DNA of 63,937 nt, filler included, from Guillardia theta CCMP2712 (taxonomy: Eukaryota > Protista > Cryptophyta): assembly GCF_000315625.1 (NCBI RefSeq). It is 5 parts of 5 records of this genome, joined end to end, with 100 filler letters (N's around TTAATTAATTAA, not from the genome) between each part and the next. Parts side by side here need not be neighbours in the genome. Positions count along the whole stretch, not along the records: positions 61,244 to 63,937 come from NW_005434077.1; 4 more parts are not named here. The stretch is one strand, 5' to 3'. The notes under the pieces are model-generated. The model did no database searches. It was not told the DNA's origin and was given only the letters and a program-made list of their open reading frames with translations. Below, piece by piece: positions 61,138-63,937 of this stretch. Position 1 is the stretch's first letter, and each line of letters starts with the position of its first letter. The translations under genes and the position numbers were made by a program.

Positions 61138-62137
61138 GGTACCNNNNNNNNNNNNNNNNNNNNNNNNNNNNNNNNNNNNNNNNNNNNTTAATTAATTAAN
61201 NNNNNNNNNNNNNNNNNNNNNNNNNNNNNNNNNNNNNNNNNNNGGGGTTGGGGCAAGGTTTGCATTTTCTTTGAGATGTCGAAACTCTACTTATCGCAAC
61301 GGGAATGACACTGAGTATGTGTAAAGATCACATACGTTCACAGAACAGACTGACAAACAGACATACAGAAGAGACAAACAAACAAACGAACAGCAACAGA
61401 CAAACACACATACACAGAACAGACAGACAAACAGACTTACAGAAGAGACAAACAAACAAACGAACAGTTCAGGCAAATAAACAAACATACCCTTCAAATT
61501 TCAAATTATGTCCAAATATTTCGGATATGTCAAATCAGATCCTTACATTTTGTAATCAGACGCAATGGGTCGGGCACGCATGTCGCGCCAACGATGATGT
61601 TTTCCTGGGGTTGCAATACGCATAAGCTCACGATCAGCTGCGTTGTGAGGCATCGAGACCAGAAGAAATGGAGATAAAATGTCCTCCATTGAAAACATTG
61701 ACTTTCAAGATGTACCACCTTCCATTTTGCATGAACCCCTGATCTTGGAGATTCAAAGTTCCCTCCTATCTCGACCTCAGAGTTCGATTGAAGCTCAATG
61801 GACAAATAGCACCCTGGGCTTAAGGGTTCTTTTAACTCCTGGTTGTGGAATCCGCTATCATGAAGATGATCCTGCAAGAACCACAAGGATGATCTATTCC
61901 AGGTTGTTGTAAGTGTGTTTCTGCTTGGCAATCAATAGCAACGCTTAGCAGATGTGATTGTTTACACATACTCATCGTCATTCCTGTTGTGATCAGTAGA
62001 GTTTCGATTATCTTTGGTGAAAATGCAAACCTTGTTGCCAACCGTGATGATTCATTTAGGATCCTCACATCATTCTATTTGTTTGCATCTCCTTCTTTTG
62101 AAAAGTGTATCTCAGAGTGTTATGGTCTACTGTGACA

Positions 62138-62332
62138 TCCGGGCGGCCGTGACCGGTCAGCGGACCGTGTCAGCAGGCCCGTGACATGTCAGCCGGCTGA
62201 CAGGGGCCGTGACCCGGCTGACAGGCTCACCTGACCGGTCACGTGACACATCACGTGACCGAGACAAGACTTTTTTAGTTGGCAAATAAACAATCTTCAG
62301 AAACTGTTGTTATGCAAAAAAACCTCCCTTGA
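62138..62332 (-). repeat. Inverted partial copy of the 332-bp unit with a substituted internal segment
   Basis: 62138-62277 and 62319-62332 are reverse complements of unit sequence. The intervening ~40 nt is unrelated to the standard unit. Confidence 0.9.
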
Positions 62333-62537
62333 NNNNNNNNNNNNNNNNNNNNNNNNNNNNNNNNNNNNNNNNNNNNNNNNNNNNNNNNNNNNNNNNNNNN
62401 NNNNNNNNNNNNNNNNNNNNNNNNNNNNNNNNNNNNNNNNNNNNNNNNNNNNNNNNNNNNNNNNNNNNNNNNNNNNNNNNNNNNNNNNNNNNNNNNNNNN
62501 NNNNNNNNNNNNNNNNNNNNNNNNNNNNNNNNNNNNN

Positions 62538-63937
62538 CGGGTCACGGCCCCTGTCAGCCGGCTGACATGTCACGGGCCTGCTGACACGGTCCGCTGACCG
62601 GTCACGGCCGCCCGGAGAGATCAGGCCCCCGGCCAATCTCCGGACACTTAGCCTCCTGGCGGGCCTCCAGGGGGTCTGAGGCGGGGCTGAAGGCTGCAGT
62701 CGGTCTACTGACGGGCCCGGCCGGCAGGATCCGTCGAGAAACAGGGGGGTCAAGGGAGGTTTTCTTCCCCCTGGGAGAAATGTCCTATGGGTTTTTGGAT
62801 CTGCGATATAAAAAAGTCTTGTCTCGGTCACGTGATGTGTCACGTGACCGGTCAGGTGAGCCTGTCAGCCGGGTCACGGCCCCTGTCAGCCGGCTGACAT
62901 GTCACGGGCCTGCTGACACGGTCCGCTGACCGGTCACGGCCGCCCGGAGAGATCAGGCCCCCGGCCAATCTCCGGACACTTAGCCTCCTGGCGGGCCTCC
63001 AGGGGGTCTGAGGCGGGGCTGAAGGCTGCAGTCGCTCTACTGACGGGCCCGGCCGGCAGGATCCGTCACCGGCGAGAAACAGGGGGGTCAAGGGAGGTTT
63101 TCTTCCCCCTGGGAGAAATGTCCTATGGGTTTTTGGATCTGCGATATAAAAAAGTCTTGTCTCGGTCACGTGATGTGTCACGTGACCGGTCAGGTGAGCC
63201 TGTCAGCCGGGTCACGGCCCCTGTCAGCCGGCTGACATGTCACGGGCCTGCTGACACGGTCCGCTGACCGGTCACGGCCGCCCGGAGAGATCAGGCCCCC
63301 GGCCAATCTCCGGACACTTAGCCTCCTGGCGGGCCTCCAGGGGGTCTGAGGCGGGGCTGAAGGCTGCAGTCGGTCTACTGACGGGCCCGGCCGGCAGGAT
63401 CCGTCGAGAAACAGGGGGGTCAAGGGAGGTTTTCTTCCCCCTGGGAGAAATGTCCTATGGGTTTTTGGATCTGCGATATAAAAAAGTCTTGTCTCGGTCA
63501 CGTGATGTGTCACGTGACCGGTCAGGTGAGCCTGTCAGCCGGGTCACGGCCCCTGTCAGCCGGCTGACATGTCACGGGCCTGCTGACACGGTCCGCTGAC
63601 CGGTCACGGCCGCCCGGAGAGATCAGGCCCCCGGCCAATCTCCGGACACTTAGCCTCCTGGCGGGCCTCCAGGGGGTCTGAGGCGGGGCTGAAGGCTGCA
63701 GTCGCTCTACTGACGGGCCCGGCCGGCAGGATCCGTCGAGAAACAGGGGGGTCAAGGGAGGTTTTCTTCGCCCTGGGAGAAATGTCCTATGGGTTTTTGG
63801 ATCTGCGATATAAAAAAGTCTTGTCTCGGTCACGTGATGTGTCACGTGACCGGTCAGGTGAGCCTGTCAGCCGGGTCACGGCCCCTGTCAGCCGGCTGAC
63901 ATGTCACGGGCCTGCTGACACGGTCCGCTGACCGGTC
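62538..63937 (+). repeat. 332-bp palindrome-rich tandem array, about 4.2 units, running off the window
   Basis: Period 332 bp (one unit 338 bp owing to a 6-bp insertion near 63068). Units near-identical. Confidence 0.97.

What the first reader, a model, noticed from the sequence alone, without database searches (positions are those of the whole stretch)
62138..62332. Long constant repeat with an exchangeable ~40-45 nt spacer-like insert
Seen: every forward unit reads TCAAGGGAGG-TTTT-[CTTCCCCCTGGGAGAAATGTCCTATGGGTTTTTGGATCTGCGATA]-TAAAAAA-GTCTTGTCTCGG (56 nt between GAGG and GTCTTG). The inverted copy keeps both flanks but reads TCAAGGGAGG-TTTTTTT-[GCATAACAACAGTTTCTGAAGATTGTTTATTTGCCAAC]-TAAAAAA-GTCTTGTCTCGG (52 nt). 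The insert is unrelated in sequence but similar in length, is bounded by a T-run and an A-run, and both inserts can form imperfect hairpins. Point-mutation drift of a satellite does not explain a clean block swap. Inference, three options: (i) a structured ~280-nt scaffold with a variable guide/spacer segment; (ii) the joined ends of a small mobile element that captured different flanking DNA on circularisation, as tyrosine-recombinase elements with T/A-rich ends can, and was then amplified in tandem (a Crypton recombinase lies in this window, but no direct link is shown); (iii) two array subfamilies. Caveats: only two insert types are visible, and one flank is only ~14 nt before an N gap.
Basis: partly seen in the sequence, partly recalled or inferred. 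Interest (0 to 1): 0.8.

Follow-up and report, generated by a model that had tools for sequence, protein, structure and literature searches.

The report
Satellite repeat edge with trapped flank DNA
The "exchangeable spacer" is a 46-base scrap of the neighbouring non-satellite DNA caught between pieces of a very abundant 332-bp satellite repeat at the edge of an array, so this is an ordinary rearrangement scar (or an assembly chimera), not a guide or spacer system.

Summary
Four forward 332-bp units carry the same 43-nt AT-rich block. One inverted partial copy keeps both flanks but has an unrelated 38-nt block.

The interpretation does not hold. In two independent DNA runs, a contig joins window position 62123 directly to 62271, skipping the inverted satellite fragment. 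It carries the "variant insert" and then continues into non-satellite sequence after 62316. The variant insert is therefore part of the flanking dispersed repeat, which I call F, present at roughly 4-7 copies and transcribed.

The junctions look like repair scars: a 7-nt shared TTTTTTA, two unassigned A's, and a 14-nt filler with a 9-mer copied from the satellite. The inverted 133-nt fragment is 100% identical to the array. It corresponds exactly to the palindrome-rich module of the monomer (DNA fold z = -4.2).

The standard block is constant. It shows no letter variant at or above the 5% listing threshold across about 17,000 satellite contigs of one run. It is also identical in a closed 362-nt contig of another run. 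No RNA read fell on the satellite in 764 Mb of RNA-seq. Neither block folds better than shuffled sequence.

Verdict: an ordinary high-copy satellite with a junction artefact. Low interest.

The parts
61244..62123 (.). Non-satellite flank (F1): one copy of a low-copy dispersed repeat family F, about 41% GC. It contains a (ACAGACAA)n microsatellite and a roughly 90-nt inverted repeat.
   Evidence: Contigs with 0-3 differences lie at depth about 207-277 in X1 and about 5-17 in X16. Paralogous contigs with about 8% differences lie at depth 936 and 33. Composition; inverted-repeat arms.
62124..62137 (+). 14-nt filler that belongs neither to F nor to the inverted satellite. Its first 9 nt (GGTCTACTG) recur in the odd satellite units at 62702 and 63372.
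   Evidence: It is skipped by the 62123>62271 joint. The 9-mer match comes (D8); about 1-2% of random 14-mers give such a match.
62138..62270 (-). Inverted satellite fragment S_a, 133 nt and 100% identical to the forward units. It is exactly the palindrome-rich module of the monomer.
   Evidence: Alignment. Three hairpins, DNA fold z = -4.19. The fragment ends 2 nt past the base of hairpin 3.
62271..62277 (.). TTTTTTA, a 7-nt microhomology shared by the satellite (the A-run beside the block) and by F. The satellite/F junction lies somewhere inside it.
   Evidence: The contig joint lands at 62271. The satellite reads ...caagac+tttttta+tatcg in this orientation.
62278..62316 (.). F-specific part of F2.
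   Evidence: In X1 (depth 1583) and X16 (depth 55) it is contiguous with 62123 and is followed after 62316 by non-satellite sequence beginning GATTCAAGTTTGCATGAC. Eight RNA reads cover it in that form, with T>C at 62313.
62317..62332 (-). Two unassigned A's, then the satellite's A4 + cctcccttga (start of S_b). This is the end of the left contig.
   Evidence: Sequence. The alternative contigs diverge after 62316.
62333..62537 (.). Assembly gap of 205 N.
62538..63937 (+). Satellite array: 4.2 units of 332 bp (one of 338), about 65% GC. It runs off the end of the piece.
   Evidence: Summed word depth is about 0.5-1.4 million in X1 and about 9-28 thousand in X16, against flank contigs at about 240 and about 14.
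62764..62806 (+). Standard 43-nt AT-rich block, a constant part of the monomer. It also lies at 63102-63144, 63434-63476 and 63766-63808.
   Evidence: X1 shows no letter variant at or above the 5% listing threshold inside it, only a 1-nt run-length change at 62767. It is identical in X5's 362-nt contig.
62816..62948 (+). Palindrome-rich module of the monomer, with two GTCACGTGA E-box palindromes and repeated GTCAC/CTGAC motifs. It also lies at 63154-63286, 63486-63618 and 63818-63937 (cut).

Best explanation
The repeat is an ordinary, very abundant satellite DNA. It is non-coding and was not detectably transcribed in the one RNA run read. Its monomer is 332 bp and GC-rich. It consists of a 133-nt palindrome-rich module, a roughly 140-nt GC-rich stretch, and a constant AT-rich block of about 55 nt bounded by a T-run and an A-run.

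The 'variant insert' is not a second cargo of a scaffold. It is 46 nt (62271-62316) of the neighbouring dispersed repeat F. In other copies of F this stretch continues without interruption from the left flank (to 62123) into further F sequence.

At this locus, satellite sequence sits on both sides of those 46 nt. A 133-nt satellite fragment plus a 14-nt filler lies between F1 and F2, and satellite replaces F after F2.

The likely origin is inferred, not shown. It would be non-homologous or microhomology-mediated repair, or replicative template switching (MMBIR/FoSTeS-like), at the edge of a satellite array. The few A/T runs of the GC-rich monomer are the only places offering microhomology to AT-rich flank DNA. 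That explains why both breakpoints sit at the runs bounding the block. The hairpin-forming module would favour stalling and strand switching. On this reading the similar length of the two blocks is a coincidence and has no function.
For: Shown:
- Joint 62123>62271 in one contig each of X1 (depth 1583) and X16 (depth 55). Both carry T>C at 62313 and a non-satellite continuation after 62316. RNA reads show the same form.
- The TTTTTTA at 62271-62277 is common to the satellite and F.
- The 14-nt filler contains a 9-mer of the satellite, with a chance of about 1-2%.
- S_a is 100% identical to the array and coincides with the three-hairpin module, z = -4.19. It ends 2 nt after hairpin 3.
- The standard block is constant. 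Of 17,148 laid contigs in X1, none gives a letter variant at or above the 5% listing threshold in 62764-62806. Loose ends near the block carry standard-block letters. X5 holds a 362-nt contig with 0 differences. By my own knowledge of de Bruijn graphs, 362 = 332 + 30 is what a closed loop of k = 31 gives for a homogeneous tandem array.
- The satellite got 0 RNA reads out of 19.8 million records, while F did get reads.
- The two blocks are unrelated and neither folds. There is no Rfam family.
- X1 also holds other rare rearranged satellite joints and fold-back ends in the palindromic module (tables 5 and 7).

From the literature: template switching at microhomology with templated insertions is the MMBIR signature (PMC8421209).
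Against: - The window's own three junctions were not seen in the two DNA runs. At 62313 the only contig laid is the satellite-free form. Logan contigs drop rare paths next to million-fold repeats, so this proves nothing either way.
- The joints are reported with 'between: not known'. Direct abutment of 62123 and 62271 in those contigs is therefore very likely but not printed.
- The near-equal length of the two blocks (56 vs 52 nt between GAGG and GTCTTG) is left to coincidence.
- Only one instance exists, so the mechanism cannot be tested statistically.
- The organism and chromosomal location are unknown.
Confidence: 0.7

Rival explanations
1. The left contig end (62124-62332) is an artefact: a chimeric clone or read, or an assembler join. 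The real locus would be the plain F1-F2-F3 form, with no satellite there at all.
For: In X1 and X16 only the satellite-free form is laid at 62313. The satellite parts are 100% identical to the consensus. The contig stops 16 nt into the satellite at an N gap. Contigs built from this million-fold repeat even carry library adapter (Nextera-like loose ends at 62260 and 63777), which shows how easily artefacts surface here.
Against: Three junctions within 200 nt share at most 7 nt. An overlap or k-mer assembler cannot create them without real reads that span them. Microhomology plus a templated filler is what biological repair leaves, although polymerase chimeras can look alike. Missing contigs in Logan assemblies are not evidence of absence.
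Confidence: 0.15
2. The satellite core (GTCTTG...GGGAGG, about 280 nt) spreads as a unit, for instance through extrachromosomal monomer circles or rolling-circle copies. It breaks and rejoins in the AT-rich block and so captures foreign DNA there. Alternatively, a minor array subfamily carries the F2-type block.
For: Both breakpoints lie at the homopolymer runs that bound the block, and the captured piece has nearly the length of the block it replaces. A rare contig in X1 joins 62769 to 62813, skipping the block (depth 30).
Against: In other copies F2 is contiguous with F1, so the satellite pieces are the additions, not F2. The fragment next to F1 is truncated at 133 nt with a filler, which is not an element end. 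There are no target-site duplication, no terminal inverted repeats and no Helitron-type ends (sequence). The F2-type junction does not reach contig level in two deep runs. There is only one instance.
Confidence: 0.1
3. A structured RNA scaffold of about 280 nt with a variable guide or spacer segment.
For: The flanks are constant around a replaced block. The whole monomer folds somewhat better than shuffles as RNA (z = -2.6), which is expected from its DNA palindromes.
Against: The satellite got 0 RNA reads in 764 Mb of RNA-seq despite thousands of DNA copies. The block is constant across copies. The only variant is flank DNA. There is no Rfam match at or near a gathering score. No associated gene exists: the ORFs have no Pfam hit or homologue.
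Confidence: 0.02

Closest known systems
Satellite DNA with dyad symmetries (non-B-form-prone, often centromeric; Kasinathan and Henikoff 2018, PMC5889037)
   Same: Head-to-tail array with a homogeneous monomer. Summed depth is three to four orders of magnitude above the flank. It is non-coding. A 133-nt module of three strong palindromes is present.
   Different: Chromosomal location and any link to the centromere are untested. The monomer is unusually GC-rich (65%) compared with its 41% GC surroundings. No published description of this sequence was found.
Microhomology-mediated, template-switching rearrangement junctions (MMBIR/FoSTeS; PMC8421209)
   Same: Several junctions lie within 200 nt. 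There is a 7-nt microhomology, 2 untemplated or slipped bases, and a short filler with a 9-mer that occurs nearby in the satellite.
   Different: This is a single natural instance in an unknown organism. The order of events cannot be reconstructed, and an in-vitro chimera would look similar.
rDNA intergenic-spacer subrepeats of Daphnia (323-bp repeats; PMC3849761, PMC3036644)
   Same: The period is similar, the array is GC-rich with a TATA-like AT-rich motif, and the source appears to be freshwater.
   Different: The published D. pulex rDNA unit and Pokey consensus files hold none of the satellite's motifs, while a positive control was found. The closed 362-nt loop contig and the very high depth fit long arrays rather than 3-6 subrepeats per spacer.
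Repeat-spacer arrays and guide-RNA scaffolds (CRISPR-like)
   Same: Only the superficial picture of constant sequence around a replaced block of about 40 nt.
   Different: One block type makes up essentially all copies. There is no spacer diversity, no detected transcription, no associated genes, and this is a eukaryote-type satellite context.

Membership tests
Satellite DNA | Long head-to-tail arrays of one monomer | tested here: met
   4.2 units, period 332, 98% matches, running off the piece. A closed 362-nt contig in X5.
Satellite DNA | High copy number relative to unique DNA | tested here: met
   Summed word depth is about 0.5-1.4 million against about 240 for flank contigs in X1, and about 9-28 thousand against about 14 in X16. 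This gives an order of magnitude only, because the tool warns that summed depth is not a copy number.
Satellite DNA | Non-coding | tested here: met
   The ORFs on the unit have no Pfam hit or homologue and are not in the protein collection. The period is not a multiple of 3.
Centromeric satellite | Association with CENP-A or the primary constriction | not testable with these tools
   Only dyad symmetry was shown.
Guide/spacer scaffold RNA | Many different inserts between constant flanks | tested here: not met
   There is one standard block, with no letter variant at or above the 5% listing threshold among 17,148 contigs. The single other block is flank DNA. Public contig collections gave 0 hits.
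Guide/spacer scaffold RNA | Transcription of scaffold plus insert | tested here: not met
   0 reads on the satellite in 19.8 million RNA-seq records of X35. Reads over the variant block are in the satellite-free form. Small-RNA libraries were not available.
Guide/spacer scaffold RNA | Conserved RNA structure or known family | tested here: not met
   The best Rfam match scores 21.5 bits against a gathering score of 80. The blocks fold no better than shuffles.
Tyrosine-recombinase element (Crypton-like) circle junction | Linked recombinase gene and the same two ends at several unrelated sites | tested here: not met
   There is no coding capacity in the piece. Only one site is seen, and the satellite fragment next to the flank is truncated with a filler. 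The rest of the genome is not available.
Helitron/Helentron-borne tandem repeat | 5'-TC and 3'-CTRR ends, a hairpin near the 3' end, insertion between A and T (from my own knowledge of the family) | tested here: not met
   The putative ends read A6-G-TCTTG and ...GGGAGG-T4. There is no CTRR and no hairpin just upstream of GGGAGG.
Daphnia pulex rDNA IGS repeat | Sequence match to the published rDNA unit | tested here: not met
   Satellite motifs are absent from the consensus rDNA and Pokey files of PMC3849761, while the 18S control motif is present.
MMBIR/FoSTeS-type complex junction | Microhomology at breakpoints | tested here: met
   A 7-nt TTTTTTA at the S_a/F2 junction and a 1-nt overlap plus 2 extra A's at F2/S_b.
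MMBIR/FoSTeS-type complex junction | Short templated insertion from nearby sequence | tested here: inconclusive
   A 9 of 14 nt exact match to the odd satellite units. The chance is about 0.7-2.3% per random 14-mer. This is a single case.

The most novel reading that the evidence does not exclude
The AT-rich block bounded by homopolymer runs is a preferred break-and-capture site of a palindrome-rich satellite. Monomers, through template switching or extrachromosomal circles, pick up foreign DNA of about the length they lose. The locus at 62124-62332 would be such a capture caught early, before any amplification into a new monomer variant.
Probability: 0.07. Interest if true: 0.45.

Novelty: new member of a known kind. 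Interest (0 to 1): 0.13.

Why it matters
It matters little beyond clean-up. The finding removes a candidate 'guide/spacer' system from the scan. It also shows how satellite array edges with trapped flank DNA can mimic a scaffold with exchangeable cargo.

The satellite itself may be of modest use to whoever works on this genome, as a centromere or heterochromatin candidate. It is 332 bp and 65% GC, carries a three-hairpin module with paired GTCACGTGA E-box palindromes, occurs in thousands of copies, and is found in runs labelled with about ten organisms.

The junction is a tidy natural example of microhomology use at the only A/T runs of a GC-rich repeat.

Tried and rejected
- **Public contig collections.** All returned 0, so no further inserts could be tabulated that way.
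- **Daphnia rDNA IGS or Pokey origin.** I suspected this from the freshwater runs and the 323-bp IGS repeats. It is rejected because the published consensus files lack every satellite motif while the control motif is present.
- **Literature by sequence and by '332 bp satellite'.** Nothing relevant turned up.
- **Rfam at permissive E-value.** Only sub-threshold noise appeared.
- **Protein route to more copies or to the organism.** Flank and satellite ORFs have no Pfam family, no homologue and no exact entry in the collection.
- **Homology between the two blocks.** There is none.
- **Hairpins in the blocks.** They are at chance level.
- **The 29-nt continuation of the satellite-free form.** It does not occur elsewhere in the piece.
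- **Organism identity.** It could not be established because run labels are coded. Several labelled 'organisms' may simply be samples that contain DNA of one species. X5 carries the same paralogue variants as X1 and X16 at depth about 2. I therefore do not claim cross-species conservation.

Full report
**What is in the piece**

The piece 61244-63937 has three parts.
- A flank of about 41% GC (61244-62137).
- A short inverted stretch of repeat that ends at a 205-N gap (62138-62332).
- A tandem array of a 65% GC unit (62538-63937) that runs off the end.

Tandem Repeats Finder gives period 332, 4.2 copies and 98% matches. The complete units differ only in three ways: an alternating G/C (62703, 63035, 63373, 63705), a 6-nt insertion (63067-63072) and one C>G (63770).

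**The observation**

Four forward units carry T4 + 43 nt + TAAAAAA. One minus-strand copy carries T7 + 38 nt + TAAAAAA. The two blocks are unrelated, with an alignment score at the shuffle mean.

From the A-run onward, the inverted copy is 100% identical to the forward units for 133 nt. It then leaves the unit at 62138.

Neither block folds better than its shuffles (z +0.61 and +0.02).

**What the variant block is**

The only reads call allowed laid four runs on the piece: Logan contigs of two DNA runs (X1 and X16), raw RNA-seq reads of one run (X35), and contigs of a third DNA run (X5).

In X1 (depth 1583) and in X16 (depth 55), a contig joins 62123 directly to 62271. It thereby skips 62124-62270, which is the inverted satellite fragment. 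It carries C instead of T at 62313. After 62316 it runs on into non-satellite sequence (GATTCAAGTTTGCATGAC...) instead of the satellite flank.

Eight RNA reads cover 62283-62316 in this same form, with the same C and the same continuation.

They therefore belong to the flanking sequence family, which I call F. Other copies read F1 (to 62123), F2 and F3 without any satellite.

The flank contigs with 0-3 differences lie at depth about 207-277 in X1 and about 5-17 in X16. The satellite-free F1-F2-F3 contig and a paralogue with about 8% differences lie 3-7 times higher. F is thus a small dispersed repeat family, and it is transcribed.

One caveat applies. The tool labels the joint 'between: not known', so direct abutment is very likely but not printed.

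**Anatomy of the junctions**

Three junctions lie within 200 nt.
1. **Satellite fragment to F2.** In this orientation the satellite reads ...caagac TTTTTTA tatcg and F reads ...gtgttat TTTTTTA gttgg. The junction lies inside 7 shared bases (62271-62277).
2. **F2 to satellite.** F contributes up to the a at 62316. The satellite normally has four A's before cctccc, but the window has seven. Two bases are therefore unassigned.
3. **F1 to satellite fragment.** Fourteen bases (62124-62137) belong to neither side. Their first nine (GGTCTACTG) occur in the odd satellite units (family D8). A random 14-mer gives such a match in about 1-2% of trials.

**The inverted fragment and the palindromic module**

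The 133-nt fragment is exactly the part of the monomer made of three strong palindromes. As single-stranded DNA it folds at -41.7 kcal/mol against -27.6 for shuffles (z = -4.19). The rest of the unit is unremarkable (z +0.9). The fragment ends 2 nt past the base of the third hairpin.

**Proposed mechanism (inferred)**

Microhomology, slipped bases and a short templated filler are the signature of microhomology-mediated end joining or replicative template switching (MMBIR; PMC8421209).

The GC-rich monomer has A/T runs only around its AT-rich block. Joins with AT-rich flank DNA are therefore expected to fall at those runs. That removes most of the apparent coincidence that the block is what got replaced.

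The similar length of the two blocks remains a coincidence under this reading.

**Is the block a variable segment?**

It is not. X1 gave 17,148 laid satellite contigs.
- No letter variant at or above the 5% listing threshold falls inside 62764-62806. Only a 1-nt C-run change at 62767 (about 5% of depth), a rare T insertion at 62791 and an A-run change at 63811 (about 5%) are listed.
- Loose ends next to the block carry standard-block letters.
- Depth over the block is of the same order as over the rest of the unit.
- A contig that skips the block (62769>62813) has depth 30 against about 800,000.
- X5 holds a 362-nt contig with no difference from the window, standard block included. By my own knowledge of de Bruijn graphs, 362 = 332 + 30 is what a closed loop of 31-mers gives for a homogeneous tandem array without retained exits.

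**Is it an RNA?**

Of 19.8 million RNA-seq records read (764 Mb, about 6% of the run), none lay on the satellite, whereas F got reads. Rfam gives only sub-threshold noise. ORFs on the unit and in the flank have no family or homologue. Small RNAs were not tested.

**Abundance and spread**

Summed word depth over the satellite is about 0.5-1.4 million in X1 and about 9-28 thousand in X16. This is three to four orders of magnitude above the flank contigs. The tool warns that this is not a copy number, so I take it only as 'thousands of units'.

Sixteen runs labelled with about ten coded organisms from eight studies hold 70% or more of the array's sampled words. The flank is held mainly by organisms A and B.

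X5 carries the same paralogue variants as X1 and X16 at depth about 2. Some of those labels may therefore be samples that merely contain DNA of one species. I do not claim conservation across species.

**What could not be settled**

The window's own junctions were not seen in X1 or X16. At 62313 the only contig laid is the satellite-free form. Contig sets drop rare paths beside million-fold repeats, so this is not absence. It does leave room for a chimeric clone, read or contig end (rival, 0.15).

The adapter sequence found in satellite contigs of X1 shows how artefacts surface at such depth.

The left contig and the array contig are joined across N's inside a repeat with thousands of copies. 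The 'inverted copy next to a forward array' may therefore be a scaffolding choice.

**Comparison with known things**

The repeat meets the definition of satellite DNA. Its dyad-rich module resembles what has been described for many centromeric satellites (PMC5889037), but its location is untested.

The idea that it is the Daphnia rDNA spacer repeat (323 bp; PMC3849761, PMC3036644) was tested and rejected.

It has no Helitron-type ends, no terminal inverted repeats, no target duplication and no coding capacity.

No paper or public contig collection available here holds the sequence.

**Verdict**

This is a real block replacement. It is explained by trapped flank DNA at a satellite array edge, or by a chimera. 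The constant scaffold with exchangeable spacer is not supported. Interest is low.

Noticed in passing
61244-61335 and 61950-62060: An inverted repeat of about 90 nt with 82% identity flanks the microsatellite and a roughly 460-nt core. The left arm is cut by the edge of the piece, so this is a MITE-like or fold-back structure of the F family. No run gave any contig over 61244-61333.
   Followed up: partly
61340-61496: A compound microsatellite, (ACAGACAA)n/(ACAA)n, with a 25-nt higher period (TRF score 152).
   Followed up: no
61514-61693: RNA-seq reads (first mate on +) cover this flank stretch. All carry G>T and T>G at 61599/61600, as does the X16 paralogue contig, so the transcripts come from a paralogous F copy. 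A 59-nt indel form (joint 61570>61630) occurs in both X1 and X16.
   Followed up: no
62825-62850 (and each unit): Each monomer has two GTCACGTGA palindromic E-box motifs 12 nt apart, inside an 11-bp-stem hairpin. Eight or more GTCAC/GTCAG/CTGAC motifs follow at a spacing of about 10-21 nt. This could be a protein-binding array, but it was not tested.
   Followed up: no
62703, 63035, 63373, 63705: G and C alternate from unit to unit, which hints at a 664-bp dimer higher-order repeat. Unit 2 also carries a 6-nt insertion (63067-63072).
   Followed up: partly
62260 and 63777 (loose ends in run X1): Contigs of the public run end in transposase-library adapter letters next to satellite sequence. 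This is an artefact of the extreme depth and a warning for any rare junction seen in such contig sets.
   Followed up: no
G replaces T in about 13% of the summed depth in X1 (32 contigs) and in none of X16.
   Followed up: no
62283 (RNA loose end): The transcribed F copies carry an extra CAAATAAA unit before 62283 relative to the window, a small tandem duplication polymorphism within the 'variant insert' sequence.
   Followed up: no
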